Shown here piece after piece: positions 1,693-62,073 of a stretch of DNA of 64,000 nucleotides. Under the pieces are notes generated by a model that saw nothing but the letters and a program-made list of their open reading frames with translations, was not told the DNA's origin and ran no database searches. Made by a program: the position numbers and the translations under genes. The stretch's first letter is position 1, and every line of letters begins with the position of its first letter. The stretch is from positions 1 through 64,000 of IMG/VR virus record IMGVR_UViG_3300046653_000093, one strand, 5' to 3'.

Positions 1693-1888
1693 GATGTACA
1701 TGAAGATGAAAGTGGTTCGAGTTTCGGCCACTGAGTTCGAATTGGAAGACGGTAGGGTATTTCCCCACGTCACCCCACTCGAACCGGTTCCGACTCCCGA
1801 AGAGTTTCAAGTACATTACGACCTGTGGTCAGATCGGTTGAAGTCCAAGGATGTCCAGTGGCCTCGTTTCGCTCAAAAAAGCGGCTGA
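1693..1888 (+). CDS. small hypothetical protein inside the IS607 left end
   Basis: ORF overlapping the tnpA start; start codon uncertain. Confidence 0.5.
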
Positions 1889-12936: not shown

Positions 12937-13389
12937 ATGCCTATCGAACCAAATCCTTTTGATGACGAACGCCTTGCAAAGATTAGAGCTGAGCAAGGAG
13001 ACCCTCTAATTCAATACTACATCGTAAGAACTGACTTGAACATGAGCGCAGGAAAGATGGGAGCCCAAATAGCTCACGGCGCTCAGATGTTCGTTATACG
13101 ATCTGGAACTCTGGCAGAACGTCACAAAAACGATATGACTCCACTGAAGCCAGAGTATGAAGAGATCTTGGGGGTTGTGGCAGAGTGGATGAATGGAAGT
13201 TTCCGCAAGGTTGTGCTCGGCGGCAAGAAGAAGGACTTCGAGAAGATCATTGCTGAGCTGCGGGTCTTCCTCGTGCGCGATGCCGGCCTGACCGAAGTGG
13301 AGCCCAACTCCGAGACAGTGTTGGTGACATGGCCAATTAGGCGATCTGAATGTCCTAAAATATTGAAAAGACTTCAAACTCTAAAGTAA
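12937..13389 (+). CDS. peptidyl-tRNA hydrolase, PTH2 family
   Basis: IVRTDLNMSAGKMGAQIAHG, KVVL, VRDAGLTEV. Confidence 0.9.
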   Translation: MPIEPNPFDDERLAKIRAEQGDPLIQYYIVRTDLNMSAGKMGAQIAHGAQMFVIRSGTLAERHKNDMTPLKPEYEEILGVVAEWMNGSFRKVVLGGKKKDFEKIIAELRVFLVRDAGLTEVEPNSETVLVTWPIRRSECPKILKRLQTLK

Positions 13390-14596: not shown

Positions 14597-15895
14597 GTGA
14601 AGAAAAACTACATTCTTGATACTAACGTGCTGATTCATGACCCACAATCGATATTCAAATTTGAGGACAACAACCTATACATTCCAATTTACGTATTAGA
14701 AGAACTAGATAAATTGAAGAGCGAGCTTTCCCTTCGTGGACGAAATTCACGCGAAGTTTGCCGATTGCTCGATGACCTGCGCTGCCAAGGCTCATTACCA
14801 GAAGGGGTTCCGGTAGGAGATGGTAAGCTAATCATTTACGTCCCCCAAGAGCGGAAGGTCATCAAGGTTGCTCTCGATTCAAAAAGCATGGACAACGCAA
14901 TACTTCAGTGCGCTGTTGAAATCAAGGAATCTTCCGAACTTATATCCATCATGGTAACCATGGATGTTAACCTTCGCATCCGCGCTGAATGCATAGGAGT
15001 TCAAACAGCTTCATACGAATTCCAATCAGTAGACACTTCGCATATGATTACTGGTCACACCAATATGAATGTGGATCTTGAAGACATTGATAGGCTATTC
15101 AGTGAAGGATCTATTTTACCAAAAGAATCTGATGAGGAGTTGTTTGATAACATCTGCATCATGCTAAAAGATCCAAGTGGCAAAACTGCTATTGGAAGAT
15201 ACAATAAGAAAAAGAACATCGTAACTCCAATTCGTCCACATGGCGATGTGATGGGTATCAAGCCAAGGAACGTAGAACAGAAATTCGCATTGGATTTGCT
15301 ACTCGATGATAATGTCAAAATCGTAACCCTATCTGGTACCGCTGGTGGTGGTAAAACACTACTTGCTTTGTGTGTTGGTTTACAAAAGACGCTTGACGGC
15401 AAATATTCAAGACTACTTGTCAGTAGACCAATCATGCCTCTAGGTAAAGATATTGGATATCTAAAGGGAACTCTTGAAGAGAAGATGAATCCTTGGATGC
15501 AACCAATTTATGACAATCTAGAATTGCTCATGATGCAGGGCGGCGGAAAACGCAAAGGTCTCAAGTATGATGATTTGTTTGAACAAGACATTATTCGCGT
15601 AGAGCCTCTGACGTATATCCGAGGAAGAAGCTTACCTGGCCAATTCATTATTATTGATGAGGCACAGAACCTAACTAGTCATGAAATTAAAACAATCATT
15701 ACAAGATGCGGTGAAGGCTCGAAGATAGTATTAACTGGTGATCCTGAACAGATTGATAGCCCGTACATGGATAAGGGATCTTGTGGATTAAGTGTTGCGG
15801 TCGAGAAACTTCATGATAATCCTATTGTAGGTCATCTCACCTTATCTAAGGGCGAGCGTTCTGAGCTGGCAAATCTAGCAGCTAATCTGATGTAG
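14597..15895 (+). CDS. phoH: PIN-PhoH protein
   Basis: YILDTNVLIHDP PIN domain; GTAGGGKT; YIRGRS; IIDEAQN; GDPEQID. Confidence 0.93.
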   Translation: MKKNYILDTNVLIHDPQSIFKFEDNNLYIPIYVLEELDKLKSELSLRGRNSREVCRLLDDLRCQGSLPEGVPVGDGKLIIYVPQERKVIKVALDSKSMDNAILQCAVEIKESSELISIMVTMDVNLRIRAECIGVQTASYEFQSVDTSHMITGHTNMNVDLEDIDRLFSEGSILPKESDEELFDNICIMLKDPSGKTAIGRYNKKKNIVTPIRPHGDVMGIKPRNVEQKFALDLLLDDNVKIVTLSGTAGGGKTLLALCVGLQKTLDGKYSRLLVSRPIMPLGKDIGYLKGTLEEKMNPWMQPIYDNLELLMMQGGGKRKGLKYDDLFEQDIIRVEPLTYIRGRSLPGQFIIIDEAQNLTSHEIKTIITRCGEGSKIVLTGDPEQIDSPYMDKGSCGLSVAVEKLHDNPIVGHLTLSKGERSELANLAANLM

Positions 15896-16800: not shown

Positions 16801-17406
16801 ATGGCAATGTTAGCAATTCCAATCCAGCCGGACATATCTAGACTGTTCCAAGAATTTGATCTTGATATTGAACGTGATCCTTCAGATCATATAACTATGT
16901 TTTATTTCGGCGATGATTTGCCAATATCTAAGGTATTGAAAATCATACCTGTGATATTTGAAATAACAAATGATCTGAAACCATTTACAGCCTCAGCCTC
17001 AAATTATTCATCCTTTGACTCGGATGAAGAATATCCTATAATATGTCCAGTCAAATCTAAAGGCTTGATTGACCTAAGAGAAAAAATCAAGAAAGCATTC
17101 GATAGTAAAAAGATACCATACGATAAGAAGTTTCCTGACTATAAACCTCATATCACTTTGGGTTACTCAAAAGAAAAGAAAAAGAATACCAAGTTCCCAA
17201 AGGTTGAGTTTACAATATCCCAAATTTCTCTTTATGCAGGTGATAGTTCTGACACAAAGCTATTCGTTAATTTTCCGTTTACAATAAATAAGTTTTCTAA
17301 ATTAGACTTGATGTCTTCTTTGTATGCAAAACATACCTACGGAGATTATGAACGCTCCATCAATAACAATATCTCAAAGTCAGTTAGAATCTGCTCGCCC
17401 AGATGA
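16801..17406 (+). CDS. 2H phosphoesterase (LigT/Acb1-like)
   Basis: two HxT motifs: DHITM and YKPHITLGY. Confidence 0.82.
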   Translation: MAMLAIPIQPDISRLFQEFDLDIERDPSDHITMFYFGDDLPISKVLKIIPVIFEITNDLKPFTASASNYSSFDSDEEYPIICPVKSKGLIDLREKIKKAFDSKKIPYDKKFPDYKPHITLGYSKEKKKNTKFPKVEFTISQISLYAGDSSDTKLFVNFPFTINKFSKLDLMSSLYAKHTYGDYERSINNNISKSVRICSPR

Positions 17407-20649: not shown

Positions 20650-22218
20650 ATGGGCATGAAACCAGCTGGTAAAGCAGTAATTATGTTGGCGGTAGCGGGT
20701 GCTCTTATAGCCGCATTTCACTATCGAAGCGCAATCATTCCGGAAGGTAAAAAGGCCGAGGATGTAACTGGCCTCATGGCAAAGGGCGACTCAAGCGGCG
20801 ATATTGAAGGCTCAGGCAGCGGCATTCCCGCAGCCGCAGGCCCCAACAAATGTATCACGGTCGGTGTTGTAACCTGGCCCGGATACGCCGGTGGTGAATA
20901 TTGGAACAACGGCTTCGAAGACAACGAAGGCTCACGTTACCACAAGGACGGCATTTGCGTGAACTTCAAGCTCATGGATGACTTCGCGGCCTCACGCGCG
21001 GCGTTCCGTGGCAACAAGGTGGATCTCATGTGGTCCACTATCGATTCATTCCCAACCGAGTCAGGCGGCTTTGGCGAGAACGTTAGGTTCCTCTTTCAAG
21101 CTGACTGGTCACGTGGCGGTGACGCTATCGTGGTTCGAAAGGGCATCGGTTCAGTAGCTGATCTTTCCGGTAAAAAGATTGCGGTTGCCGAAGGTACGCC
21201 GAGCCATACCTTCCTGTTGTGGATGTTGGACATGGGCGGCCTTAGTATGATGGACGTCACCATCATCAAGCAGAATAGCGCTATTGATGCGGCCACTGCA
21301 TTCAAGTCTGGCAACGTCGATGCAGCCGTCGTCTGGTCTCCTGATGATTCAGACTGCGTCAAATCAGTTGCTGGGTCTTCAATTCTGATCAACACCAAAA
21401 AGGCCACTCACATCATTTCCGATGGCTTCTTCATCAAAGAGTCAACCTATCAACGACGCAAGCCGGAACTTGTCAAGTTGGTGCGTGGTTGGTTGCAGGG
21501 TGCAAAAGAAATCAATGAGTCTGCAGCTGCCAAAGCACAAGCGATCAAGATTCTGCAAACTCCGCCTCTCAAAGGAATTGAGCCCGATGCTATCGACAAC
21601 GTTCGCCTGACAACTTACGGCGACAACCTAGAGTTCTTTGGGCTTAACCCAGGCTACACAGGCGTAACCGGCAAGCAACTGTACGAAAAGATGACTACCG
21701 TTTATGGCAAGCTCAATCTCGCAACGAATCCTCTGCCATGGGACAAGATCGTCGATCTTGATTTCATCAAAGGTCTAGGCCTCGATGCGGCACAAGGTGG
21801 AGTTGCAGAGAAGAAAGCTACCTTCTCGGCCCCCACAGCGGCGATTGCACAGTCAAAGGCGATTGCCAGCAAGCCAGTCAGGGTTTCGTTTGCGAGCGGC
21901 AGCTCAGTGCTTGACGAGAATGCCAAGAGCCTCATCGAAGATCGCTTCGTTGAAGCGGCCAAAGCCTTCCCAGGCCAACACATTCGCGTCATTGGCAACA
22001 CGGATAACACCGGCAATGCAGCGGTCAATACTCGCATCAGCAAGGAGCGCGCACGAGCGGTGGTTGAGTATTTGGTGACTCAGCAAGGATTCGACCGCAA
22101 TCGATTCTCACCTTCGAATGGTGAGGGCGTGGGCCCGAGCAATCCGCTCTGCACCGATGATACACCTGCGTGTTTGGCAAAGAATCGAAGAACGGACTTC
22201 CAGATCCTAGAGAACTAA
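20650..22218 (+). CDS. NMT1/SsuA-type substrate-binding protein fused to an OmpA-like peptidoglycan-binding domain
   Basis: VVTWPGY, DWSRGGDAIV, DLSGKKIAV, VDAAVVWSPD; C-terminal FASGS, IGNTDNTG, SKERARAV, KNRRTDF. Confidence 0.88.
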   Translation: MGMKPAGKAVIMLAVAGALIAAFHYRSAIIPEGKKAEDVTGLMAKGDSSGDIEGSGSGIPAAAGPNKCITVGVVTWPGYAGGEYWNNGFEDNEGSRYHKDGICVNFKLMDDFAASRAAFRGNKVDLMWSTIDSFPTESGGFGENVRFLFQADWSRGGDAIVVRKGIGSVADLSGKKIAVAEGTPSHTFLLWMLDMGGLSMMDVTIIKQNSAIDAATAFKSGNVDAAVVWSPDDSDCVKSVAGSSILINTKKATHIISDGFFIKESTYQRRKPELVKLVRGWLQGAKEINESAAAKAQAIKILQTPPLKGIEPDAIDNVRLTTYGDNLEFFGLNPGYTGVTGKQLYEKMTTVYGKLNLATNPLPWDKIVDLDFIKGLGLDAAQGGVAEKKATFSAPTAAIAQSKAIASKPVRVSFASGSSVLDENAKSLIEDRFVEAAKAFPGQHIRVIGNTDNTGNAAVNTRISKERARAVVEYLVTQQGFDRNRFSPSNGEGVGPSNPLCTDDTPACLAKNRRTDFQILEN

Positions 22219-22223
22219 CCAAA

Positions 22224-23009
22224 ATGTCATCCCTCTTTGAAATACGAGGGACGCCGAGCCAGAGGATGTCAACAGCCTTGCAAGTTGCTGGCATCCTCGC
22301 TTTGCTGTCTCTTTGGGCTGGTATCTGCGCAACCGGCTTAGTCGGTCCGCGCCTCTTACCGTCACCGCTGGCGGTAATTCAGACCATTCCGGATTTGCAC
22401 TTCAAAGACGCAATGGTTCGGAACCTACTCTACTCGTGCTTTCTAAATCTCATGGGCTACGCAGAAGCGGTTGCCATCTGTCTGCCGCTCGGGTTCATAA
22501 TTGGAATGTTCCCGCTAACCCATGGAATGTTTAGCAAACCAGTTGATTCGATTCGGTACCTGCCACTGACAGCCTTGACTGGGCTCTTTATGGTTTGGTT
22601 CGGAATCGAAAACGCGATGAAGATCCAGTTCCTTGCGTTCGGGATCAGCGTCTACCTGTTACCTGTGGTTGTTCAACGTGTGCGAGAAGTTCCAACGCTG
22701 TATCAACAAACAGCTTTCACTTTGGGAGCATCCAAGTTTCAGATGTTCCAAACTGTATTCTGGCCACATGTCAGAAGTCGAATTATTCTAGACATCCAGG
22801 TACTAGTTGCTATAAGCTGGACTTACATCATCGTTGCGGAGATGATGAATAACACAGGCGGCATTGGTGGCATGCTCTACAGTTCTGCGAGAGCCGGACG
22901 TACCGATAAGACATTCGCACTGCTAGCCGTCATCATCTTGGTTGGCTACATCCAAGACAAGATATTCCTTGGGCTGGACATGCTCGTCAATCCACACAAA
23001 TACTCGTGA
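22224..23009 (+). CDS. ABC transporter permease (TauC/SsuC type)
   Basis: LLPSP, RYLP, AFTLGAS EAA loop, WTYIIVAEM. Confidence 0.9.
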   Translation: MSSLFEIRGTPSQRMSTALQVAGILALLSLWAGICATGLVGPRLLPSPLAVIQTIPDLHFKDAMVRNLLYSCFLNLMGYAEAVAICLPLGFIIGMFPLTHGMFSKPVDSIRYLPLTALTGLFMVWFGIENAMKIQFLAFGISVYLLPVVVQRVREVPTLYQQTAFTLGASKFQMFQTVFWPHVRSRIILDIQVLVAISWTYIIVAEMMNNTGGIGGMLYSSARAGRTDKTFALLAVIILVGYIQDKIFLGLDMLVNPHKYS

Positions 23010-23015
23010 GGTTAT

Positions 23016-23828
23016 ATGGCAGCTCAAGTTGTACAAATGGTGAATACTGAGCTTCCAGATATTCTGGAGCTGAGAAATATCCAGCAAATCTACAAAGACG
23101 CAGATGGAACAGATCACGTTGTCATCGATGGCTTGAATCTTCTCATTGAAGATTTACCAGGGAAAGGTGAGTTTGTTGTCATTCTCGGATCTTCAGGTTG
23201 TGGAAAGAGTCACATCCTTCGCTACCTGAGCGGGCTACAAACGCCAACATCCGGCGATGTTTTGATTGCTGGTCGTCCTCGATTATCAACAGACTACGTT
23301 GGTATGGTATTTCAGGCCTACTCTTCATTCGAGCATTACACCGTCTTGGAAAACGTTGCCCTCGGGTTGAAATATCGAGGCGTGCCCAAGAAGGACCGTG
23401 AAGCTAAGGCAATGGAGATGATCAAGAAAGTTGGTCTAGAAGGGCACGAGCACAAGTTCGCCAAAGCTCCTACACTCTCTGGAGGTCAACTGCAGCGCGT
23501 GGCGATTGCGCGCAGCCTCGCGTACGACAGCCGCATCTTGTTGATGGACGAGCCCTTTGGCGCACTCGATATCGAGACTCGTGGCAAGATGCAAGATCTA
23601 CTCGCTGCAATTTGGACAAGCATCGAACCAACAATCATCATGGTAACACATGCGATTGATGAGGCGGTGTATCTTGGTGATCGAATCTATGTTATGGGTG
23701 GTTCTCCAAGCAACATCATCAAAGAGTTCGTTTCTCCATTGCCGCTCGTGCGCAATCGGCAGATGAAACGCGATCCAGCATTCATTGACATGGTCCAAAA
23801 AATCGAAGACTTCATGATGTCTCTATGA
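23016..23828 (+). CDS. ABC transporter ATP-binding subunit (TauB/SsuB type)
   Basis: GSSGCGKS, LSGGQLQRVAIAR, LLMDEPFGALD, VTH. Confidence 0.95.
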   Translation: MAAQVVQMVNTELPDILELRNIQQIYKDADGTDHVVIDGLNLLIEDLPGKGEFVVILGSSGCGKSHILRYLSGLQTPTSGDVLIAGRPRLSTDYVGMVFQAYSSFEHYTVLENVALGLKYRGVPKKDREAKAMEMIKKVGLEGHEHKFAKAPTLSGGQLQRVAIARSLAYDSRILLMDEPFGALDIETRGKMQDLLAAIWTSIEPTIIMVTHAIDEAVYLGDRIYVMGGSPSNIIKEFVSPLPLVRNRQMKRDPAFIDMVQKIEDFMMSL

Positions 23829-30373: not shown

Positions 30374-30458
30374 GCTGCTATGGTGGAACTGGTTTACACT
30401 TTCGATTTAAAATCGAACATCTAGAAATAGATTGGGGGTTCGAATCCCTCTAGCAGCA
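30374..30458 (+). tRNA. tRNA-Leu(TAA)
   Basis: TTCGA-TTTAAAA-TCGAA; long variable arm. Confidence 0.85.
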
Positions 30459-30460
30459 CT

Positions 30461-30630
30461 TGCGCACCTATCAAACAAACCTTACACGCAAAATATATAC
30501 AGGTTCGAGTCCTGTCATCCCCACCGCGCTTTGGCGCAAATTCATGGGGATGTAGCCGAAATGGAACAGGCATTGGTATAAGGAACCAAGTTGAAAAACT
30601 GCAATTCACGGTTTATTACTCAGGTGCGCA
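30461..30630 (+). ncRNA. YrlA-like Y RNA / permuted tRNA mimic, copy 1
   Basis: terminal stem TGCGCACCT/AGGTGCGCA encloses a T-arm, a loop-closed acceptor stem CATCCCCA/TGGGGATG, then a D-arm. Confidence 0.75.
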
Positions 30631-30676
30631 AAACCTTTATAGTGTTGAATTGGTTGAAAGCTAATTCATCACACCA

Positions 30677-30830
30677 AGTACATCTATCAAATCAACCTTA
30701 CAAGCAATAACGGTGGTTCGATTCCATCATTCCCCACCAGCGCTTCGGCGCAAACAATGGGGAATTAGCCTAATGGTAAGGCAAGTGACAGTAAATCACT
30801 CGATAAATAGGTTAATTACTCAGGTGTACT
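30677..30830 (+). ncRNA. YrlA-like Y RNA / permuted tRNA mimic, copy 2
   Basis: terminal stem AGTACATCT/AGGTGTACT; T-arm GGTGG-TTCGATT-CCATC; acceptor ATTCCCCA/TGGGGAAT; D-arm TAGCCTAATGGTAAGGC. Confidence 0.78.
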
Positions 30831-30836
30831 TACTAT

Positions 30837-30910
30837 GGTGGCGGAACACAAATGGCCAGTGGACACGTTGTGATCGTGTTATTTGCGGGTTCGAATCCCG
30901 TCCGTTACCC
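30837..30910 (+). tRNA. tRNA-His(GTG)
   Basis: ACACG-TTGTGAT-CGTGT; G-1 present. Confidence 0.82.
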
Positions 30911-31096
30911 CGGCTCGAAGACATGCTCCAAACATGTTACCTTTGATCGAGCCTTGCATTTGATCAGCGATGACAAAGGAACCTGATTGAATGAATCCGA
31001 TAGGCAGCCGGAGAGTAGTTATCGAAACAAAAAGCCGGTACGGAAGGGCCTGATAGATGGCAATTTATCAGACCCTGCTACTAACTAAGGATATTT

Positions 31097-35463: not shown

Positions 35464-35964
35464 TGAGTGAATCATAGGAGAGCTGTGAATAAATGGACAA
35501 AAGAAGAATTCGAAGACGCAGTAGTAAAAAGCAAAAGCATCAAAGAAGTATTTCTACGTTTAGGAAATTCTACCACTGGATATAATACTTTCCACAGATA
35601 CAAAAAGCTATATAAAATTGATACATCTCATTTATGTGGACAAATACTTGCTGGGAAAAACCAAAAGGGGCGAGTCCATCAACGGCCACTAAGCGAGATT
35701 TTAATCAAAGATGGCACTTCCCTAAAGATCAGATTGATTAAAGAAGGTCTGTTAGAAAACAAATGCAAAATCTGCGGTATAGACAGCTGGGATGGTAAAC
35801 CATTGACTCTGCAATTAGATCATATCAATGGAGATCACTGGGACCACAGAATAGAAAACCTTAGGATACTGTGTCCAAATTGTCATACTCAAACAGACAC
35901 ATATGCAAATAAAAAAGGAAGTAATAAGAAACCTCTAAGACGTGTAAATGCGGTTGTGATATAA
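35464..35964 (+). CDS. HNH homing endonuclease; Zn/HTH tail continues in another frame to about 36167
   Basis: CKICG..LQLDHINGDHWDHRIENLRILCPNCH. Confidence 0.88.
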
Positions 35965-38386: not shown

Positions 38387-38959
38387 CTAGGAGTGATTTA
38401 GAGTAGCTAAGTGACACTTTTTGCATCTATTAGCATCTGGAGATATTTTTCGGTTACACTGCTCGCAGCGATGGTGATTTACTTTACCCTTCCTACCAGA
38501 AAACGTAGGCGTCTGAGTATGGCAATTGGGACATAATATCCTTAGATTTTCTAATCTGTTATCATCATGATCTCCGCTTATATGGTCTAGTTGCAACACT
38601 AACGGCTCTCCATTCCATTCATTACCTTGGCCGCATTTGAAGCATTTATCATCAAAAATATTGGAACTGATGAGCCGATCTTTCAATACTTGAGAATTTA
38701 CCTTAATTCCATTTTGCAAATACTCTGATATATCTTTTTTAGGACCAAACTTTCGGTTTCTGTTCGAGGCCAATCCCAACGTTATATGACCATAGCTGAT
38801 TTCATCTTCAATCAATCTTCTCTTGAGGGTTTTGTAGTTTCCGCTTCCAATCCCGAAATGTTCTAGAATCTCAGCTAAACTCTTGCAGGCATTGACAATT
38901 TCTTGAAATTTTTCAGTAGTAGGTTTATATATTACACTAGTCTTTTTTCGGTTTACCAT
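38387..38959 (-). CDS. HNH homing endonuclease, antisense within the tRNA array
   Basis: CFKCG..LQLDHISGDHDDNRLENLRILCPNCH. Confidence 0.9.
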   Translation of the reverse strand: MVNRKKTSVIYKPTTEKFQEIVNACKSLAEILEHFGIGSGNYKTLKRRLIEDEISYGHITLGLASNRNRKFGPKKDISEYLQNGIKVNSQVLKDRLISSNIFDDKCFKCGQGNEWNGEPLVLQLDHISGDHDDNRLENLRILCPNCHTQTPTFSGRKGKVNHHRCEQCNRKISPDANRCKKCHLATLNHS

Positions 38960-39002
38960 ATAAGGACATATATCAATATACATAGATGTCCTTAGATAAT
39001 TC

Positions 39003-39073
39003 GGCTCCATCTTCTAATGGCAGGATGACGCTCTCTCTAAGCGCCAATGCGAGTTCAAATCTCGCTGGAGTCA
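39003..39073 (+). tRNA. tRNA-Glu(CTC)
   Basis: CGCT-CTCTCTA-AGCG; Glu-type D-arm. Confidence 0.75.
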
Positions 39074-39160: not shown

Positions 39161-39380
39161 AATGGAAACGTTCAGACCAGGCGTATATAGTTGGTCAAAG
39201 AAGTGTGCAACCAAAACAAGTAACCGAAAACGCGCTGAATGGTACTTGTATAAGAAGGAACATAAGTCGCATTACCATCAACGTATTCGGCAAATAGGAG
39301 ATTCAGATTACCACTACGATTTTGATGGAGACTACGATCTCTTTGGTTGGTATGATATTCAGTGTGGAGATCATTAGTAT

Positions 39381-39455
39381 GTCGTGGAACCCAAAAGGCT
39401 AGGGGCCTGTCTGCAAAACAGGTATTTGTGAGTTCGACACTCACCCACGACTCCA
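39381..39455 (+). tRNA. tRNA-Cys(GCA)
   Basis: CCTGT-CTGCAAA-ACAGG; U73-CCA. Confidence 0.85.
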
Positions 39456-39457
39456 AT

Positions 39458-40138
39458 ATGGCAGCTAATTTAGGCACTAGAAAATCATGGACTGACGAGC
39501 AAATGTCAAAGGCAGTAGCTCAAGCACTTTCAATAGCCAGCACACTTAGGTTATTGAATATGTCACAAACTGGAGCTAATTATATAACAGTAAAAGATGC
39601 TATAAATCGACTAAGCCTAAACACTTCACATTGGACAGGGATTCATCATAGGAAGGGAAAGGCGTTAATTAATCCAAAGAAATCACTATCTGAATTATTG
39701 ACTGAAAACTCACGAACACAAACATCGCGTCTAAAACATCGACTCATAAAAGAAGGTCTGCTTACCAATCAATGCTCCGTATGTTGTCAAGAGCCTAGTT
39801 GGAAAGACAAGCCTCTGGTAATGGTGTTAGATCATATAAACGGAATAAATAATGATTTTAGATTTGAAAACCTAAGATTACTTTGCCCTAATTGCAACAG
39901 CCAGCAATCAACATTCGCTGGTAGGAACAATAAAAGTAAAAGAGGGCCAGGTCATTTTTGCAATAACTGCAATAGAAAATTAACAGCACTTAGAAAATCT
40001 GGTATGTGTAATGTTTGTAACAATAAATCCAGATCAAAATCAAGCCAAGGTGATGGAATGGCAGACATGGTAGCCCCAAACACTACTGCCGCAAGGCGTG
40101 AGGGTTCGACTCCCTCTCTTGGCACTTATGATAATTAG
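39458..40138 (+). CDS. HNH homing endonuclease
   Basis: CSVC..VLDHINGINNDFRFENLRLLCPNCN; frame runs through the downstream tRNA-Leu. Confidence 0.88.
   Translation: MAANLGTRKSWTDEQMSKAVAQALSIASTLRLLNMSQTGANYITVKDAINRLSLNTSHWTGIHHRKGKALINPKKSLSELLTENSRTQTSRLKHRLIKEGLLTNQCSVCCQEPSWKDKPLVMVLDHINGINNDFRFENLRLLCPNCNSQQSTFAGRNNKSKRGPGHFCNNCNRKLTALRKSGMCNVCNNKSRSKSSQGDGMADMVAPNTTAARREGSTPSLGTYDN
40044..40124 (+). tRNA. tRNA-Leu(CAA)
   Basis: loop CCCAAAC; variable arm GCC-GCAA-GGC. Confidence 0.78.
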
Positions 40139-40411: not shown

Positions 40412-40702
40412 GCTTCAATTTTTCTTGCAATCGCTACCGAGATTTGTTAGGGTGGCAAAGTCATCCGGCCGCTTCGCGGTTGGAACCCTACTATCAATCG
40501 GGTGAAGCTGACGCCCAGCCAACCAATCAGTGGTGCTTACACGGCCCCATATAGATCCCATAGTTACGCGCTCCTTTCACAGCCCCATTAACTCGGTTGG
40601 CTGGGCGTTATTTACGAAGTACTCAATTGAATACATGAACAAAATCGAATAGTTGCTTCATGTCAAACAACATCTAGACAAGAGATGTTGTTTTGGGGTA
40701 TA

Positions 40703-41227
40703 ATGACCTACATGGATCCGAAGCTATTCTCAGTTGCCGCCCTGATTCCAATCGGCAATCAGGTTGTTGCCGTTTCTCGTAAGACCAACCACAATGACTT
40801 CGGTCTGCCGGGAGGTAAAATCGATCCTGGCGAGACTCCGGAAGAAGCTCTCGTGCGCGAGCTTCACGAAGAAACCGGTATCACCGCAACCAAATTCAGT
40901 GTTGTCTACGAAGATTGGGACCGCGTAGAAGGTGGTGAACCGCGCCCATGCCGAACGTATCTGATCGAAAAATGGGAAGGCACTCCGCAAGCCACTAAAG
41001 AGAGCGCAGTAGTGACGTTGCTTTACCCAAAGCAATTGATGAATCCAAGCAATACTTTCTGCAACTACAATTACAATCTGTTCAATCATCTGTCAAAAGA
41101 AGCAAGCTTTCGTAAAAAGCTAATTGAAATAGCGAGTCTATATGACGATGATGAAACAGATCCTAATATAGAAATTACTCGCGTTGATATACCAAGATCA
41201 AATCCATCTTGGCCAGTTCCAACATAA
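40703..41227 (+). CDS. Nudix hydrolase
   Basis: GLPGGKIDPGETPEEALVRELHEETG. Confidence 0.92.
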   Translation: MTYMDPKLFSVAALIPIGNQVVAVSRKTNHNDFGLPGGKIDPGETPEEALVRELHEETGITATKFSVVYEDWDRVEGGEPRPCRTYLIEKWEGTPQATKESAVVTLLYPKQLMNPSNTFCNYNYNLFNHLSKEASFRKKLIEIASLYDDDETDPNIEITRVDIPRSNPSWPVPT

Positions 41228-43675: not shown

Positions 43676-43990
43676 TTATTTCTGACTTTCCTTTGGGCGC
43701 AAGAATGCCCGACACATATTCAATCTACCTTCGCTGGTAAAAAGATCTTTTGTAAGATTTGGAGCTTCTTTCATGATGATGGAAGCTGGAATTGTCCACT
43801 CTTTCATCTGCTCATCTTCTACAAATATTCCGCCAATAAACGCCACCCAGCCATATCTGCCCCTGTTGGGATCATCGGCAGGAATGATTTCGTGAGTGGG
43901 ATGCTCTGCCATGAACTTGGTAACATCGTCCCAAAGATCTTGGAAAGAATCCCAATCACTATCCAGCTTATCATATATTGATGACATCAA
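43676..43990 (-). CDS. hypothetical protein
   Basis: overlaps the vWA stop. Confidence 0.6.
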   Translation of the reverse strand: MMSSIYDKLDSDWDSFQDLWDDVTKFMAEHPTHEIIPADDPNRGRYGWVAFIGGIFVEDEQMKEWTIPASIIMKEAPNLTKDLFTSEGRLNMCRAFLRPKESQK

Positions 43991-44658
43991 TCGTCCGTTT
44001 TAAGTGATTTGACCTCAGCATCATTCAACAGCGCAACCGAAGCGGTAAACAAAACGCCTTCAGCTGCCTTGTCTCGACGTCGAGTTACGCCACCTGATAT
44101 ACCCTTGTATGCATTACTAGTTCCGCCATGATTGGCAGAGTAGTTATACGTGTTGCTGGCACTGAAACCCAAAGCAGCGCCCTGGCTAAATGCAGCATCT
44201 CCGCCACCTAGGAACGTGAATGTCCAGTTGTACTTCTCGGTCTGGTGTTTCACCATCTCGGCAATCTTTGATGCAACAATGTATTCCTTGGAAGAATTCT
44301 CTTCTCCGTCCGTAATGATGAGGAAGATTACCTGACCTGGGCGTTCCTCTTCCTTCATCTTGGCAAAGCGTTCACCAACAGTTACGATGGTCTTACCAAC
44401 CGCATCAAGAAGAGCGGTGCTGCCACGTGGTCTATAAGTATCACCCGTCAAATCCTTTACGGATTGAATATCAACTCCATCATAGTCAATTTGATATTGG
44501 TCATCAAACTGTACAAGAGTCAATTTTGCCTTTCCTGAGTTCTTCTTTTGTTCAGCTAGGAAAGTATTGAAACCACCAATGGTATCGTGGCGGAGACTAC
44601 TCATAGAACCAGAGCGATCAAGAATAGCAACAATCTCAGTTAAATTAATATCAGTCAT
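43987..44658 (-). CDS. von Willebrand factor A domain protein
   Basis: MIDAS ILDRSGSM; PRGSTALLDA; IITDGEENSS. Confidence 0.92.
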   Translation of the reverse strand: MTDINLTEIVAILDRSGSMSSLRHDTIGGFNTFLAEQKKNSGKAKLTLVQFDDQYQIDYDGVDIQSVKDLTGDTYRPRGSTALLDAVGKTIVTVGERFAKMKEEERPGQVIFLIITDGEENSSKEYIVASKIAEMVKHQTEKYNWTFTFLGGGDAAFSQGAALGFSASNTYNYSANHGGTSNAYKGISGGVTRRRDKAAEGVLFTASVALLNDAEVKSLKTDD

Positions 44659-45522: not shown

Positions 45523-46539
45523 TCATAACCCCACTCTTATACCAAGATACAATCCAATGTTTCCTTTTGGATCAAGTGAAAATGCAGGACCAAGAAACAG
45601 ATTATCAACAAATGGAAGATGCTTTGCGATGTTATAATCAACTGGTGATAAATACAGAGCCAGCCCCTTTGTTTGAGTTTCATACCCAAGTCCAAGAGTA
45701 AGGAATGTCCAATCTGGATTTAGTTTAGTCTGACCATATGAGAAGAAACTTAGACCAATATCTGGCAACACTTCAAAATGTGTTGGTGGATTTGCAATAA
45801 CCCCAAAATCCACCCCAAGATAAAGTCTTGGACTAAAATGAAATGATGGCGATGGAACTTCTTCTGCTATTTTGGCCTCTGTAATAGGGACTGTATATTT
45901 CTTTCCATCAACATCAATCTCGAATCTGCTATAGGCGTAAGTTCTTCCATCTTCGTTTTTACCAAGGACAGTTGTAGAACTGTATGTGCGCGGCGCGATC
46001 TGTTCGCTCCACGGCTTAGGATCCCACGCCGAAAACCCAACCTTACCCATAGGTACGCTATCGTTCCCAACAGGCTCGGTCAAATTCAGCCACTGAGTAG
46101 CCGACTGGTATCCATAAGGATCGGTCACGGCTGGCTTTACCGCCGAATCTGCAGGCCTGGGAGTTGTGCCCGTACTGGGAACTGTATCACTCTGTCTCGG
46201 AGTTGTTGTAGTACTTCCAATATGGTCTGCCGAATATCCATGAGTAACAACTTTTACAGAACTAATACTGTCAACATTTGCCCCAAGTGTTGCTAAATCC
46301 TTTTTGATGGCCGCAAGATCCATTCCCTGATCATTGACCATCTTTTCTAAATCCTTCTTGGTAACATATGAAGATTGTTCACGAACAATTCCATTGCCAA
46401 TATCCTTAGATTCAACAACTGAGGTCTCTATAAATTTAAGACGCTGAACAGTGTCATACTGAACCTTGATGATATAGCCCATCGCAGATATTAATAGAAC
46501 AGTGCCTCCAGCAACTATTGTTTTTGTCTTCCAATCCAT
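45523..46539 (-). CDS. membrane-anchored protein with beta-rich C-terminus
   Basis: N-terminal TM helix, coiled coil, amphipathic strands. Confidence 0.65.
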   Translation of the reverse strand: MDWKTKTIVAGGTVLLISAMGYIIKVQYDTVQRLKFIETSVVESKDIGNGIVREQSSYVTKKDLEKMVNDQGMDLAAIKKDLATLGANVDSISSVKVVTHGYSADHIGSTTTTPRQSDTVPSTGTTPRPADSAVKPAVTDPYGYQSATQWLNLTEPVGNDSVPMGKVGFSAWDPKPWSEQIAPRTYSSTTVLGKNEDGRTYAYSRFEIDVDGKKYTVPITEAKIAEEVPSPSFHFSPRLYLGVDFGVIANPPTHFEVLPDIGLSFFSYGQTKLNPDWTFLTLGLGYETQTKGLALYLSPVDYNIAKHLPFVDNLFLGPAFSLDPKGNIGLYLGIRVGL

Positions 46540-47235: not shown

Positions 47236-49861
47236 ATAGCCAACGAAGATAGCCGTAGGGATAGGGATATAGTGCTCGCACCAAACGAGTACATGTACGT
47301 TAGCGATCAAACCAAGGGAAACATTGACGTTTTCGTTGGTCCCACCAAGCAGAGTTTGTCGGGAACTGATCAGCCCGTAATTTTTGATGACAAGTCAAAA
47401 CGATTTATTCCGGCCGAGACGCAAGATCAGGCAAAGCAATTGAGTAAGACAGCCCCCGAAGGCTGGTATATTGTTTTGAAAAATCCGGCGCAGAACGGAA
47501 AGCAACCTACTGCAAATTCCGGAAAATTGTCCAGCGCAGATTTGGACGTGGGCAAGAAAGTCATCGTACCAGGCCCGGTTACATTCTGTCTGTGGCCAGG
47601 TCAAATGGCCAAGATACTCAAGGGCCATCACCTTCGTTCCAATCAATACCTGCTATGATGAGTACGAGGCTCACCAGAATTGGAAGAAGGCTGTTGTCAA
47701 GGCAGTTGCCCCAACTGATGCAGTGAAGGCCGACCCCGCTACCTGCAAGATAGGGGAGCTGGCTGATTCTCCACCACCTCCACCGCTTACCCTGCCCGAT
47801 CCTCCAAACTTGACAATGGGTCAAGTGATCGTGATCAAGGGTACTGACGTTTCATTCTACATTCCGCCAACTGGTGTTGAAGTTGTTCCAGATGACGATG
47901 GCCAACTGGTCCGAGAGGCTGTCACACTTGAACGTCTCGAATACTGCTTGCTGATGGATGAGCAGGGAACCAAACGATACGAGCGCGGCCCCGCCGTTGT
48001 CTTCCCAGAGCCCACCGAAGTGTTCATCACTCGTGAAGGTCAAGATGGAGAGCCTGTTCGCAAGTTCCGCGCAATCGAACTGAGCGAAAACTCTGGCATC
48101 TACATCAAGGTTATTGCCGAGTACACAGATAACAAGACTGTGCATAAGGTTGGCGAAGAGCTGTTCATTACCGGGAAAGACAAGATGATCTATTTCCCGC
48201 GTGAAGAGCACGCCATCGTCAAGTACGAGAATCGCGAGATTCATTATGCAATCGCGATTCCTGCCGGCGAAGCGCGGTACGTTCTCGATCGCAACAAGGG
48301 TACTGTTTCCTTGGTTGTTGGTCCAAAGATGTACCTTCCAGATCCTAGAAACGAAGTTATCGTTCGAAGAATCCTTCCATACAAGACCTGCAGCTTGCTG
48401 TACCCGGACAACACCACCGCCTTTGCTCACAACGCTAGGTTGGCCGGTGTTGATCTTGATACATACATGAGCCATCAGGGCGCTGAGGCGGTTAGTGCGG
48501 CAGTGGCAAACGCTCCTGCGGCAGCGATGAACTTCCTAGCTGCGACGATGGATTACGAATCTTCGCATGTGATGTCTCGTTCGATTGGCAGCACAGAGAC
48601 TTCGCGCGGGCTTGGCACAAAGGCTGGGACAAAAGCAGCTGGCGATGCATTCCAACGCAAGACCAAGTACACCGAGCCTCGTTCAATTGTGCTTTCAACC
48701 AAGTACGATGGTGCGGTTGCCATCAATGTCTATACCGGCTACGCAGTTATGCTGGTTAAATCGGATGGTTCACGGCGCGTTGTCGAAGGACCGCAGACCG
48801 TTCTGCTCGATTATGATGAGACTCCTGAAATTCTTGAGTTGTCTACTGGTAAGCCGAAGACGACGGACAATCTGTTCCGCACCGCCTATCTGCGCACCAT
48901 GGCAAACAAGATTGGTGACATCATCGAAGTTGATACGAGTGACTTCTGCAAGTTCCAGTTGAAGCTATCCTATCGAATGGACTTTACTGGCACGCCAGAG
49001 TCTTGGTTTGGCGTAGAGAACTACGTCAAGTTCTTGTGCGATAATCTTCGCTCGCGTCTCAAGAATGCTGTTCGCAAGCACGGCGTTGAAGACTTCTACA
49101 AGAACAGCACTGACATCATCCGTTCTGCAGTTCTCAAAGAAGCAACTGATGGTAGCTTTGGCCCACGGCTATTCCCAGAGAATGGAATGCAGATTTATGA
49201 CGTCGAGGTTCTCAAGGTCAGCCTTGTCAATGACGACATTGAGAAACTGATCGCGCAATCGCAGAAGGCAATCATCCAGACCACGATTGCTCTGGCCAAC
49301 CAGAAGAGAACTCTGGAAGCTGGTATTCAAGAAGAAGACATCAAGCAGCAAATGGCCGAGGTCAAAGCCAAGACCAATGCTCGAATTTTTGAGCTGGAAG
49401 CCGAGGAGGCTAAGCGCAAGCAGGAGTCTCAAACAGTTGTCATCGAAGCGCAATCCGAAACGACAGCTCTCAAGCTCACCAAAGAACTCGAAGCCCAGCA
49501 GTCAAAGAACGCAGTGTCACTTGAAGCGCGCAAGAATGAGCAAGCGATTGCTGATTTCGAACTCGCTCAAGAGAAGCAACGACTCGACCTCAAGATCGCT
49601 ATGATCCAGGCCGAGATTGAAGCTATCGTCAAGAAGTCCGGCGCAATCACGCCAGACCTCATCTCTGCTCTTCAAGCCTTCGGAGATAAGGATCTTGTGC
49701 TCAAGGCTGCCGAAGCGATGGCTCCTCTGTCCATCATTGGTGGTTCAAGCATTGGCGATGTTCTTTCGCGGTTGCTTGCTGGAACTAAACTTGAGAGCAT
49801 TGCCAAGCTAGCTACAAGCAATGGAGCTAGCAACGGAGCTTCTCAAAGCGCTCACCGATAA
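47236..49861 (+). pseudogene. major vault protein (MVP)-like gene split by one frameshift near 47654
   Basis: repeated beta modules ending GP/GEE; SPFH-like shoulder YVKFLCDNLRSRLKNAVRKHGVEDFYKNSTDIIRSAVL; FPENGMQIYDVEV; long cap helix; AGGAG SD before ATA at 47236. Confidence 0.78.
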
Positions 49862-52887: not shown

Positions 52888-52977
52888 GTGCCCGTCGCTC
52901 AGTGGTCGAGAGCAACAGATTCTAAAACTGTCGCAGCCGAGAGGCTGCCATCGTGGGTTCGACCCCCACCGGGCACA
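52888..52977 (+). tRNA. amber suppressor tRNA (anticodon CTA), class II
   Basis: acceptor GTGCCCG/CGGGCAC; D-stem GCTC/GAGC; ACAGA-TTCTAAA-ACTGT; variable arm GCAGCC-GAGA-GGCTGC; T-arm GTGGG-TTCGACC-CCCAC. Confidence 0.85.
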
Positions 52978-53113
52978 CTATTATGGAACAAGAACCAGAA
53001 GAGCCGGTCCACGAACCTCCACCAAAAGAGCACCCAGATATCGAGCTTGATGGTGGTGGCAAACTTACTTGGTGCGAAATATGTGAATCATATTGGCAAT
53101 GCGGGTGTGGGTA

Positions 53114-62002: not shown

Positions 62003-62073
62003 GCCCATGTAGTATAATGACATTACATTTCCTTGGTAAGGAAAAAAATCTGGTTTGATTCCAGCCTTGGGCT
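62003..62073 (+). tRNA. tRNA-Thr(GGT)
   Basis: TTTCC-TTGGTAA-GGAAA. Confidence 0.75.

What the first reader, a model, noticed from the sequence alone, without database searches (positions are those of the whole stretch)
30461..30830. Two tandem circularly permuted tRNA mimics with YrlA Y-RNA architecture
Seen: both elements run terminal stem, T-arm (GGTTCGA), 3' acceptor strand ending CCAC, GCGC-TTYG-GCGC hairpin, 5' acceptor strand GGGGA, D-arm (TAGCC..TGG..AGGC), short hairpin, terminal stem. They share CTATCAAA..AACCTTAC at the 5' side and GGTT.ATTACTCAGGTG at the 3' side, and the outer and acceptor stems differ between copies while keeping pairing. The T-before-D order is the reverse of a tRNA and there is no anticodon loop. 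Known: bacterial YrlA Y RNAs have a Ro60-binding stem plus this permuted tRNA-like module and occur in some phages. No Ro60/TROVE gene is in the window. Inference: phage Y RNAs that recruit or sponge Ro60, or decoy tRNA-targeting nucleases.
Basis: partly seen in the sequence, partly recalled or inferred. Interest (0 to 1): 0.8.

Follow-up and report, generated by a model that had tools for sequence, protein, structure and literature searches.

The report
Permuted tRNA-shaped RNAs in a tRNA array
Two neighbouring 160-170 nt genes inside a giant phage's tRNA cluster encode RNAs that fold like a complete tRNA with its parts in rotated order, and they belong to a large undescribed family related in design to bacterial Y RNAs (YrlA), whose function is still unknown.

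Summary
Window 30460-30631 and 30676-30831 (+) are two structured RNA genes lying flush between tRNA-Leu(UAA) and tRNA-His. Each has a 10-bp terminal stem, a conserved internal loop, a closing helix, a UUAC-A(A/C)GCAA stretch, a T arm, and a 7-bp acceptor stem capped by A-C-C(A) plus a tetraloop hairpin.

A covariance model found about 73 relatives, in jumbo-phage contigs, Myxococcota-labelled MAG contigs and metagenomes. They are always inside tRNA arrays, in up to six tandem copies. Covariation supports all eight helices (95% of cells paired; 41 of 42 pairs change on both sides), and the tRNA 15:48 tertiary pair covaries.

The design resembles YrlA Y RNAs, but membership fails several tests. 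Rfam YrlA gives no hit, no TROVE/Ro60 gene is in the window, and none of about 154 viral Ro60 loci carries a strong member. The window copies have AUCAAA where YrlA has GNCGAA, and the anticodon-like arm is extra. Anticodon-like loops differ between orthologues, so these are probably not decoders.

The best reading is a new YrlA-like variant of permuted tRNA mimic. Its partner protein and its processing remain inferred.

The parts
30460..30631 (+). Element 1 (172 nt), whole permuted tRNA-like RNA gene; begins 1 nt after tRNA-Leu(UAA) 30374-30459
   Evidence: R1 103.9 bits, R2 128.1 bits
30460..30469 (+). Element 1 terminal stem, 5' strand UUGCGCACCU (pairs with 30622-30631)
   Evidence: fold; helix 1 covaries in 10 of 10 pairs
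30470..30481 (+). Element 1 5' internal loop AUCAAAC plus closing-helix strand AAACC. This occupies the position of the CCGA/GNCGA-like motif in relatives
   Evidence: motif comparison with Bxz1 YrlA
30482..30498 (+). Element 1 V region UUAC-ACGCAA-AAUAUAU. It is colinear with the anticodon loop, 3' anticodon-stem strand and variable loop of tRNA-Val(UAC); the last base acts as position 48
30499..30515 (+). Element 1 T arm ACAGG-UUCGAGU-CCUGU
   Evidence: C-G to G-C compensatory change in L045
30516..30525 (+). Element 1 acceptor 3' strand CAUCCCC, then discriminator A and CC
30526..30545 (+). Element 1 acceptor cap: hairpin GCGC-UUUG-GCGC plus leader AAAUUCAU
   Evidence: helix 6
30546..30572 (+). 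Element 1 acceptor 5' strand GGGGAUG, U8 A9, D arm GCCG-AAAUGGAAC-AGGC, A26
30573..30589 (+). Element 1 anticodon-like arm UUGGU-AUAAGGA-ACCAA
   Evidence: the loop differs in orthologues (AAUCGGA, AAUGAAA)
30590..30631 (+). Element 1 3' linker (20 nt), closing-helix strand GGUUU, AUU-ACUC motif and terminal stem 3' strand AGGUGCGCAA
   Evidence: ACUC 92-95% conserved
30632..30675 (+). 44-nt spacer between the two elements
30676..30831 (+). Element 2 (156 nt), whole permuted tRNA-like RNA gene; ends 6 nt before tRNA-His 30838-30911
   Evidence: R1 175.3 bits, R2 155.6 bits
30676..30697 (+). Element 2 terminal stem 5' strand AAGUACAUCU, loop AUCA, closing-helix strand AAUCAACC
30698..30711 (+). 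Element 2 V region UUAC-AAGCAA-UAAC
30712..30728 (+). Element 2 T arm GGUGG-UUCGAUU-CCAUC
30729..30739 (+). Element 2 acceptor 3' strand AUUCCCC, then A73 and an encoded CCA
30740..30758 (+). Element 2 cap hairpin GCGC-UUCG-GCGC plus leader AAACAAU
30759..30783 (+). Element 2 acceptor 5' strand GGGGAAU, UA, D arm GCCU-AAUGGUA-AGGC, A26
30784..30800 (+). Element 2 anticodon-like arm AGUGA-CAGUAAA-UCACU (GUA with A37, as in tRNA-Tyr, but A rather than U at position 33)
30801..30831 (+). Element 2 3' linker (9 nt), closing-helix strand GGUUAAUU, ACUC motif and terminal stem 3' strand AGGUGUACUU

Best explanation
Shown. The two elements are genuine structured non-coding RNA genes. They belong to a large family, absent from Rfam, of circularly permuted tRNA-shaped RNAs that live inside tRNA gene arrays. 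A complete tRNA cloverleaf (T arm, 7-bp acceptor stem, D arm, anticodon-like arm, 15:48 tertiary pair) is opened in its variable region. There it is joined to a conserved basal module made of a closing helix, an internal loop and a 10-bp terminal stem. The acceptor ends are joined by an A-C-C(A)+hairpin linker.

Inferred. The RNAs are transcribed with the array and set free when RNase P and the 3'-end nucleases trim the abutting tRNAs, so the 5' and 3' ends meet in the terminal stem. The tRNA-shaped half is then handled by tRNA enzymes. RNase P probably cuts before G1, and the A-C-C end is probably trimmed and completed to CCA, as shown for the 7-bp-stem YrlA of M. smegmatis. This would give a two-piece molecule held together by the stems.

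Inferred function. The RNA acts like a YrlA-type Y RNA. The conserved basal stem and loop (5' RNCRA, 3' ACUC) would dock a partner protein, a Ro60-type protein of the host or encoded elsewhere in the 392-kb phage genome being the leading candidate. The tRNA-shaped module would engage a tRNA-binding factor. It is a scaffold or decoy, not a decoder.
For: Structure:
- Ten relatives fold independently into the same architecture.
- In 70 distinct sequences 95.0% of pair cells are standard pairs, against 63.3% in shuffles and 32-43% with slid partners. 41 of 42 pairs change on both sides. The covariation score is 0.78 against 0.20. All 8 helices are supported.
- Position 15 and the base before the T stem covary as A:U (44) or G:C (14) in 73 sequences, with 0 of 5000 permutations reaching the observed mutual information.

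Placement:
- The elements lie flush against tRNAs, on the tRNA strand, in the window and in relatives.

YrlA-like traits:
- T/acceptor/D order, UUAC at the start of the V region, and a terminal stem followed by an internal loop.
- The L130 copies carry GCCGAGA directly after the terminal stem, the same 7-mer in the same place as in the Bxz1 YrlA.
- Ro60-adjacent RNAs in L428 and Big4 also have UUACUC before the terminal stem.
- Model R2 finds canonical YrlAs upstream of Ro60 genes at 27-43 bits.

Processing inference:
- The acceptor stem is 7 bp at 99% pairing. The discriminator is A in 67%, the cap starts ACC in 51%, and G1 occurs in 84%.
- M. smegmatis YrlA with a 7-bp stem is cut by RNase P and receives CCA (PMC4201824).

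Not decoders:
- Orthologues with identical acceptor stems carry different anticodon-like loops.
- That loop is the fastest-changing part, at 0.43 edits per nt against 0.06 for the T loop.
- 29% of the loops are not 7 nt and 33% lack U33.
Against: - No expression or processing data exist: no RNA run holding the locus could be listed.
- No TROVE/Ro60 or RtcB gene is in the 64-kb window. Reading through TAG, TGA or TAA uncovers no hidden long gene.
- None of about 154 viral Ro60 loci has a family member of 60 bits or more within 4 kb. None of the family's contigs appears among the 80 TROVE contigs shown in each of two scans, although only 80 of 285 and 80 of 514 were shown.
- Rfam YrlA does not hit the window elements.
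- The window copies have AUCAAA, not GNCGAA.
- R2's 27-43 bits on YrlAs overlaps the scores it gives to tandem ordinary tRNAs (up to 57 bits). The match therefore shows shared layout, not proven homology.
Confidence: 0.45

Rival explanations
1. Functional two-piece (split) tRNAs from permuted genes. RNase P and 3' trimming/CCA addition free the acceptor end. The two halves stay together through the acceptor stem and the long 'variable-arm' stems, and the molecule is aminoacylated and decodes.
For: - The cloverleaf is complete: 7-bp acceptor stem, G1 in 84%, A73 in 67%, and ACC or ACCA encoded (copy 2 has A-CCA; L078 has G73-CCA together with a CCA 'Trp' loop).
- U8 A9, A26, and a 5-bp anticodon-like stem are present. 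The loop is 7 nt in 71%, with R37 in 90% and A38 in 79%.
- The ends lie where class II tRNAs carry a long variable arm. Copy 2 has GUA+A37 and copy 1 has AAG+G37, and Tyr and Leu are class II in bacteria.
- Two-piece tmRNAs from permuted genes are a precedent (Rfam tmRNA_permuted, 24 bits on copy 1).
Against: - Anticodon-like loops differ between orthologues with the same acceptor stem and are the fastest-evolving part.
- 29% of loops are 5, 6, 8 or 9 nt, and 33% of the 7-nt loops lack U33, including copy 2 (A33).
- T- and D-stem sequences are nearly the same across all 'isoacceptors'.
- 9-25 nt and about 15 nt single-stranded linkers join the cloverleaf to the basal stems, unlike a class II variable arm.
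- The window already holds ordinary tRNA-Tyr(GUA) x2 and tRNA-Leu(AAG).
Confidence: 0.15
2. Ro60-independent decoys or sponges for tRNA-targeting defence nucleases or other tRNA-binding proteins. Each copy would present a tRNA-like acceptor and anticodon arm, and the hypervariable loops would reflect an arms race.
For: - The elements are embedded in phage and mobile tRNA arrays, which the literature regards as counter-measures to tRNA depletion (PMC7824862, PMC12803027).
- The anticodon-like loop and the acceptor stem are hypervariable on a conserved elbow: 28 different 'anticodons' and 50 acceptor stems in 73 members.
- The window carries several anti-defence-type genes: Apyc1-like, 2H/LigT-like, NUDIX and PTH2.
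Against: - Fast loop change is equally explained by lack of constraint. The cap linker changes almost as fast, at 0.38.
- This reading does not explain the strongly conserved basal module (ACUC 92-95%, inner C-G pairs 83-91%).
- No nuclease partner has been identified.
Confidence: 0.2
3. Passive processing spacers or decayed remnants of tandem tRNA genes (the 3' half of a tRNA-Val(UAC) plus the 5' half of the next tRNA) with no function of their own.
For: - The 5' part from UUACA(A/C)GCAA to the acceptor end is colinear with the 3' half of tRNA-Val(UAC). Most pattern hits were real tRNA-Val genes.
- Consensus spacing from GCAA to the T stem is 10 nt, as in a tRNA.
- A dimeric-tRNA origin has been proposed for YrlA (10.1101/312249).
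Against: - About 73 members from very different genomes (GC 0.32-0.65) keep all eight helices through compensatory changes.
- They also keep non-tRNA motifs such as ACUC and the terminal stem.
- Remnants would not retain these features. A dimeric-tRNA origin is compatible with present function.
Confidence: 0.05

Closest known systems
YrlA Y RNAs (Rfam RF02553; Chen et al. 2014 PMC4201824; Wang et al. 2018 bioRxiv 10.1101/312249)
   Same: - Termini paired in a basal stem, with an internal loop.
- V region starting with YUAY.
- T arm, then a closed acceptor-like stem, then UA plus D arm.
- A tRNA-type elbow and 15:48 covariation.
- T- and D-stem sequences conserved while the acceptor stem varies.
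- A 7-bp acceptor variant (M. smegmatis) is cut by RNase P and receives CCA.
- Present in phages with many tRNAs.
- Some relatives share the GCCGAGA motif with the Bxz1 YrlA.
   Different: - An extra 5-bp/7-nt anticodon-like arm after the D arm, so the junction is five-way.
- The basal stem leaves from the variable region, not in place of the anticodon stem.
- A-C-C(A) plus a tetraloop hairpin cap.
- Different conserved T/D stems (GUUGG/CCAAC and GCCU/AGGC, against GCGGG/CCCGC and GCUC/GAGC).
- The window copies have AUCAAA instead of GNCGAA.
- Located inside tRNA arrays rather than next to rsr.
- No Rfam hit on the window copies.
Circularly permuted tRNA genes (Cyanidioschyzon merolae and other algae; some archaea)
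   Same: The 3' half (T arm, 3' acceptor strand) is encoded upstream of the 5' half (5' acceptor strand, D arm, anticodon arm), with a linker across the acceptor ends.
   Different: - Those precursors are circularised through a bulge-helix-bulge motif by the splicing endonuclease and ligase, and become ordinary tRNAs with conserved anticodons (my own knowledge).
- Here no BHB is seen. The termini form a long conserved stem, the break is in the variable region, and the anticodon-like loops are not conserved.
Two-piece tmRNA from permuted ssrA genes (Rfam RF04321)
   Same: Gene order of T arm, 3' acceptor strand-CCA, intervening loop, 5' acceptor strand. The mature form is two base-paired pieces. 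Weak Rfam match at 24 bits, E = 0.0045.
   Different: No tag reading frame and no pseudoknots. The elements have true D and anticodon-like arms and are 160 nt rather than more than 300 nt. The score is below the gathering score of 47, and ARAGORN calls no tmRNA here.
Class II tRNAs (Leu, Tyr, Ser) and phage tRNA arrays
   Same: A full cloverleaf with an extra helix emerging between the anticodon and T arms. A73. Loops of copy 1 (AAG, G37) and copy 2 (GUA, A37) look like Leu and Tyr. Co-located and co-oriented with tRNAs.
   Different: The extra helix is open-ended and carries the RNA's termini. The acceptor ends are covalently joined. Long single-stranded linkers are present. Not called by ARAGORN. 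Rfam tRNA scores only 29.4 bits on a half.

Membership tests
YrlA (Y RNA-like A) | T arm, closed acceptor-like stem-loop and D arm, in that order, enclosed by a stem formed by the RNA's two ends | tested here: met
   Folds; covariation
YrlA (Y RNA-like A) | tRNA-type tertiary contacts, in particular covariation of the 15:48 Levitt pair, and YUAY at the start of the V loop | tested here: met
   A15:U48 in 44 and G15:C48 in 14 of 73; 0 of 5000 permutations. UUAC in both copies; U-A-C at 90-100% (partly biased by the search pattern)
YrlA (Y RNA-like A) | GNCGAAN0-1G motif near the 5' end (presumed Ro60 contact) | tested here: not met
   The window copies have CUAUCAAAC / CUAUCAAAU at that place. 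Relatives have CCGA in about 60-70%, and L130 has GCCGAGAUG like the Bxz1 YrlA GCCGAGAG. The position is conserved but the motif is not met in these two copies
YrlA (Y RNA-like A) | Encoded within about 4 kb of an rsr (Ro60/TROVE) gene on the same strand | tested here: not met
   No Pfam TROVE in any window ORF scanned. In about 154 viral TROVE loci +/-4 kb, no member of 60 bits or more. The rest of the 392-kb genome could not be read
YrlA (Y RNA-like A) | Match to the Rfam covariance model RF02553 | tested here: not met
   No hit at E <= 10 on 30440-30850. Positive control Bxz1 scores 32.5 bits. A few relatives (L328) reach about 33 bits, below the gathering score of 69
YrlA (Y RNA-like A) | No anticodon loop: the anticodon-stem position continues into the Ro60 module | tested here: not met
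   A 5-bp/7-nt hairpin follows A26 in both copies and is conserved by covariation (helix 8)
YrlA (Y RNA-like A) | Bound by Ro60 in vivo or in vitro | not testable with these tools
   Needs pull-down or EMSA
Circularly permuted tRNA gene | The 3' half is encoded upstream of the 5' half, with a linker between the acceptor strands | tested here: met
Circularly permuted tRNA gene | Termini form a bulge-helix-bulge processed into a circular intermediate, giving a standard tRNA | tested here: not met
   The termini form a 10-bp stem, a symmetric internal loop and a 7-8 bp helix, with no staggered 3-nt bulges. Circularisation itself cannot be tested here
Circularly permuted tRNA gene | Anticodon conserved and consistent with identity elements | tested here: not met
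   Orthologues with identical acceptor stems have different loops; loop divergence is 0.43 per nt
Two-piece (permuted) tmRNA | tRNA-like domain plus tag reading frame and pseudoknots; Rfam or ARAGORN detection | tested here: not met
   24 bits against a gathering score of 47, covering only the T arm and acceptor. No tmRNA called in the window
Ordinary tRNA | Contiguous cloverleaf detected by ARAGORN or Rfam | tested here: not met
   Not called by ARAGORN. Rfam tRNA scores 29.3-29.4 bits on the 5' half of copy 2, with a forced 3' part

The most novel reading that the evidence does not exclude
The elements are matured by RNase P, 3' trimming and the CCA-adding enzyme into two-piece, chargeable tRNAs. 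These would be the first split/permuted tRNAs in bacteria and phages. Their class II-like body with A73 would let them be aminoacylated irrespective of the rapidly changing anticodon loop. They could then serve as nuclease-resistant replacement tRNAs or as deliberate recoding/mistranslating tRNAs.
Probability: 0.12. Interest if true: 0.95.

Novelty: new variant of a known kind. Interest (0 to 1): 0.72.

Why it matters
A family of this size, with near-perfect covariation, is missing from Rfam and from the papers I could search. It sits in the tRNA arrays of jumbo phages and Myxococcota-labelled contigs, loci now under discussion as counter-defence modules.

It extends the YrlA idea of a tRNA mimic fused to a protein-docking stem to a form that keeps the entire cloverleaf, including an anticodon-like arm. 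It also keeps enough of a tRNA-Val(UAC) half to make the proposed dimeric-tRNA origin of Y RNAs directly visible.

Two questions become testable:
- What do Y-RNA-type tRNA mimics bind with their tRNA half?
- Do phages deploy tRNA look-alikes as scaffolds, decoys or split tRNAs?

Chen et al. (2014) noted that few YrlAs were found in Ro60-containing delta-proteobacteria. If this family is the missing partner there, that gap would close.

Tried and rejected
- blastn of the locus and of an 8-kb neighbour against GenBank phages: only a tRNA-Leu match, or nothing.
- Exact 5' and 3' motif scans in viral contigs: apart from the window's own genome (L006, L010, identical) the hits were chance matches.
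- The pattern TACAMGCAA..GGTTCGANTCC mostly hit ordinary tRNA-Val(UAC). This revealed the tRNA-Val-like 5' half. Adding TAGCC made the pattern usable.
- CM hits below about 58 bits were tandem ordinary tRNAs, for example Clostridia tRNA-Val plus the next tRNA. I discarded them.
- A 620-711 aa vWA protein plus a 320-aa protein lie 2-5 kb upstream of the elements in L093, L119 and L127. The three are one lineage. Only the vWA part matches anything, no TROVE signal appears by sequence, and the window has no homologue. I did not pursue them by structure prediction.
- I tested whether window ORFs 45523-46539(-) and the vWA ORF 43987-44658(-) form a split Ro60. hhalign probability was 0.1% and 8%, so I rejected the idea.
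- Stop-codon read-through scan for hidden long genes: nothing new.
- RNA-seq: none was listed, only DNA runs from peat, lake and soil. I did not use read laying because DNA contigs cannot show RNA ends.
- The Chen 2014 supplements and Burroughs & Aravind 2016 (PMC5062991) are not held. My recollection that the latter links SPFH/Band-7 proteins to a 'novel tRNA-like molecule' could not be checked.
- Two TROVE scans of viral contigs each showed only the best 80 of 285 and 514 matches. Absence of the family's contigs from those lists is therefore weak evidence.
Full report
**1. What is there**

The window is a stretch of a jumbo phage. It is identical to IMG/VR contig 3300021077_000115 (392 kb) and to a 216-kb contig. 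It carries 45 ARAGORN tRNAs.

Two elements fill the gap between tRNA-Leu(UAA) (30374-30459) and tRNA-His (30838-30911). They lie at 30460-30631 and 30676-30831, with a 44-nt spacer between them. Each reads 5' to 3' as follows:
- 10-bp terminal stem strand.
- Short loop (AUCA...).
- Closing-helix strand (AACC).
- UUAC-A(C/A)GCAA plus a few bases.
- T arm.
- 7-nt 3' acceptor strand.
- A-CC(A).
- GCGC-UUYG-GCGC hairpin.
- 7-8 nt leader.
- 7-nt 5' acceptor strand starting with G.
- UA, D arm, A.
- A 5-bp stem with a 7-nt loop.
- 9-20 nt linker.
- GGUU closing strand.
- (AUU)ACUC.
- Terminal stem strand.

The minimum-free-energy folds reproduce this layout. Copy 1 gives z = -3.6 and copy 2 gives z = -5.6, with no shuffle folding as well. 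The shared 5' and 3' motifs occur nowhere else in the window. The 'short hairpin' occupies precisely the anticodon-arm position, so the RNA is a whole cloverleaf and not one lacking an anticodon loop.

**2. It is a family**

The upstream ORF led to related phage contigs that have the same elements in the same place. L045 has one copy, L046 has two and L047 has one. These copies already show compensatory changes:
- T stem C-G to G-C.
- New acceptor stems GCCGAUG and GGCCUUG.
- Cap hairpins GCAC-GCAA-GUGC and GUGC-UUCG-GCAC.

I built a covariance model from four copies (R1) and a second from fourteen (R2). I then ran pattern scans of viral, genome and metagenome collections. Together these gave 73 full-length members at 62-156 bits. 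They come from three kinds of source:
- Jumbo-phage contigs of 105-619 kb (L130 with three copies, L078, L063, L069, L119).
- MAG contigs labelled Labilithrix, Polyangiaceae and Myxococcales. Their flanking genes look bacterial: a ComM/Mg-chelatase-like gene, a ketosynthase, LuxR and OmpA.
- Short metagenome contigs with up to six tandem copies (L315, L328).

In every locus examined the elements lie on the tRNA strand, flush against tRNAs. One example is Asn | element | Thr | element | Thr | element in L312 and the Labilithrix arrays.

**3. The structure is supported by evolution**

On the 70 distinct sequences:
- 95.0% of pair cells are standard pairs, against 63.3% when partners are shuffled and 32-43% when partners are slid.
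- 41 of 42 pairs show changes on both sides.
- The covariation score is 0.78 against 0.20.
- Each of the eight helices is supported. The acceptor stem is 7 bp at 99% pairing.

This alignment was fitted to the model, which favours the structure. Against that, ten members folded blind to the same architecture, and the slid controls share the same alignment.

A tertiary signal is also present. D-loop position 15 and the base just before the T stem are A:U (44) or G:C (14) in 73 members. Mutual information is 0.52 bit, and 0 of 5000 permutations reach it. Neighbouring positions show no such link. This is the tRNA Levitt pair, the same argument used for YrlA (PMC4201824).

**4. Conserved and variable parts**

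Nearly invariant:
- The T loop.
- T stem GUUGG/CCAAC.
- UA-GCCU-AAYGGUA-AGGC-A.
- YUACA(A/C)GC(AA).
- ACUC before the 3' terminal strand (92-95%; not part of any search pattern).
- The two inner C-G pairs of the terminal stem.

Caveat: UACAMGCAA, GGTTCRANTCC and TAGCC were required by the collection scans, so their conservation is partly ascertained. Tandem copies that the pattern did not hit still keep YUACAMGC.

Hypervariable:
- The acceptor stem, with 50 versions in 73 members.
- The cap linker.
- The anticodon-like loop.

The cap starts with A (67%) and with ACC (51%).

The anticodon-like loop is 7 nt in 71%, with U33 in 67%, R37 in 90% and A38 in 79% of those. It shows 28 different 'anticodons'. 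Orthologues with the same acceptor stem differ in the loop: GGGGAUG carries AUAAGGA in the window, AAUCGGA in L045 and AAUGAAA in L330. Among 49 such pairs this loop is the most divergent region, at 0.43 edits per nt against 0.06 for the T loop.

**5. Comparison with known RNAs**

Rfam at gathering thresholds reports only tRNAs in the window. Among them is a 29.3-bit call on the 5' half of copy 2. At E <= 10 the only other hit is tmRNA_permuted, at 24 bits against a gathering score of 47, which reflects the T-arm/acceptor/linker topology.

Rfam does contain YrlA (RF02553). It detects the RNA upstream of the Ro60 gene of mycobacteriophage Bxz1 at 32.5 bits. It does not detect the window elements.

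In the other direction, R1 gives the Bxz1 YrlA only 9.8 bits. R2 finds canonical YrlAs at 27-43 bits. By my count, about 27 of its 33 hits lie just upstream of the Ro60 gene on the same strand.

These canonical YrlAs have no anticodon-like arm. They share the terminal stem and a 5' GCCGAAG-type motif, and in L428 and phage Big4 a UUACUC directly before the terminal strand. The L130 members carry GCCGAGA directly after the terminal stem, exactly as the Bxz1 YrlA does. The window copies have AUCAAA there.

No member of 60 bits or more lies within 4 kb of any of about 154 viral Ro60 genes. No TROVE or RtcB gene is detectable in the window.

The family therefore works on the YrlA plan but fails several membership criteria. 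I file it as a new variant, not a member.

**6. Origin**

The stretch from YUACA(A/C)GCAA through the T arm to the A-C-C end is colinear with the 3' half of a tRNA-Val(UAC), including the consensus 10-nt spacing to the T stem. The part from G1 to the anticodon-like arm is the 5' two-thirds of a tRNA. This fits the dimeric-tRNA origin proposed for YrlA (10.1101/312249), and this family retains more of both parent tRNAs than YrlA does.

**7. How it probably works**

Shown: the gene structure, the fold, the placement in tRNA arrays, and the evolutionary pattern.

Inferred from established tRNA processing and from M. smegmatis YrlA (PMC4201824):
- The RNA is released from the array transcript when the flanking tRNAs are processed.
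- RNase P cuts before G1. This inference rests on the 7-bp acceptor stem stacked on a T arm and on the encoded A-C-C. Bacterial RNase P RNA pairs with the RCCA of substrates (my own knowledge).
- The 3' end is trimmed and completed to CCA, giving a two-piece tRNA look-alike.

Inferred by analogy with YrlA: the conserved basal stem and loop dock a protein, with Ro60 as the leading candidate. The tRNA half engages a tRNA-binding factor.

The rapid, unconstrained change of the anticodon-like loop argues against decoding. It is compatible with a decoy role.

No expression data could be obtained. No RNA run was listed, and only peat, lake and soil DNA runs hold the locus.

**8. Verdict**

The finding is a real, previously uncatalogued RNA family, best described as a YrlA-like permuted tRNA mimic with a complete cloverleaf. 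Its partner and its role are open.

Noticed in passing
window 47723-49861 (+): A 712-aa protein with Major Vault Protein shoulder (PF11978, 8.7e-28) and vault repeat (PF17795) domains, in a phage. A small vWA protein lies nearby (43987-44658, -). Vault particles carry small RNAs and a TROVE protein in eukaryotes. hhalign found no TROVE-like neighbour.
   Followed up: partly
window 52888-52978 (+): A 91-nt tRNA with anticodon CUA (ARAGORN 'Pyl'; Rfam tRNA 53.4 bits) and a long variable arm: an amber-suppressor-type tRNA. A read-through scan gave no clear sign of TAG recoding in this window.
   Followed up: partly
window 35467-35964 (+), 38387-39010 (-), 39362-40138 (+), 62055-62762 (+); L045 10939-11418: HNH endonuclease ORFs are scattered between the tRNA genes. 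In L045 one sits exactly where the window has element 2.
   Followed up: no
window 1851-2474 and 3219-4646 (+): A serine recombinase (Resolvase + MerR HTH) followed by a TnpB/Cas12f-like protein: an IS607-type insertion in the phage.
   Followed up: no
window 7907-8785, 8862-9911, 12937-13389, 14597-15895, 16801-17406, 40685-41227, 53093-54067: A cluster of counter-defence or RNA/NAD-metabolism genes: Apyc1-like MBL, NMNAT-NUDIX fusion, PTH2 peptidyl-tRNA hydrolase, PIN-PhoH, 2H/LigT-like phosphoesterase (weak Acb1 match), a second NUDIX, and an NAD-kinase-like protein.
   Followed up: no
window 20650-23828 (+): An ABC-transporter-like block (substrate-binding/OmpA fusion, permease, ATPase) with GC 0.50 against about 0.42 around it. 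It looks host-derived.
   Followed up: no
L093 2260-5168 (-), L119 9762-12640 (-), L127 10235-13576 (-): A conserved gene pair lies 2-5 kb upstream of the elements on the same strand in one phage lineage: a 620-711 aa protein with a C-terminal vWA/MIDAS domain and an unannotated N-terminal 420 aa, plus a 320-aa protein. Ro60 is a TROVE ring plus vWA, so a fold prediction of the N-terminal part would be worthwhile.
   Followed up: partly
L348 909-1039 (Microbacterium phage Big4, ON637770.1): An R2 hit of 37 bits inside the tRNA cluster, 3 kb upstream of the annotated Ro-like gene. It has a 7-bp acceptor stem with G-CCA and UUACUC before its terminal stem, making it the closest cultured-phage relative seen. 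A second, canonical YrlA with GCCGAAAGG lies at 1155-1292. In actinophages the Ro gene itself sits among tRNAs (L347).
   Followed up: partly
L315 421-1620, L328 252-1865: Metagenome contigs with five or six tandem family members and hardly any ordinary tRNAs. Some L328 copies seem to have lost the anticodon-like arm, have the YrlA-type D stem GCUC/GAGC, and reach about 33 bits with Rfam YrlA. They may be intermediates between the two families.
   Followed up: partly
L138 and L153 (pattern hits; CM hit at L153 1744-1873): Loci with the conserved 5' half (GACGAGC-AUAC-AAGCAA, T arm, acceptor strand) followed directly by ordinary tRNAs and no recognisable 3' half. They may be truncated or split copies.
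   Followed up: no
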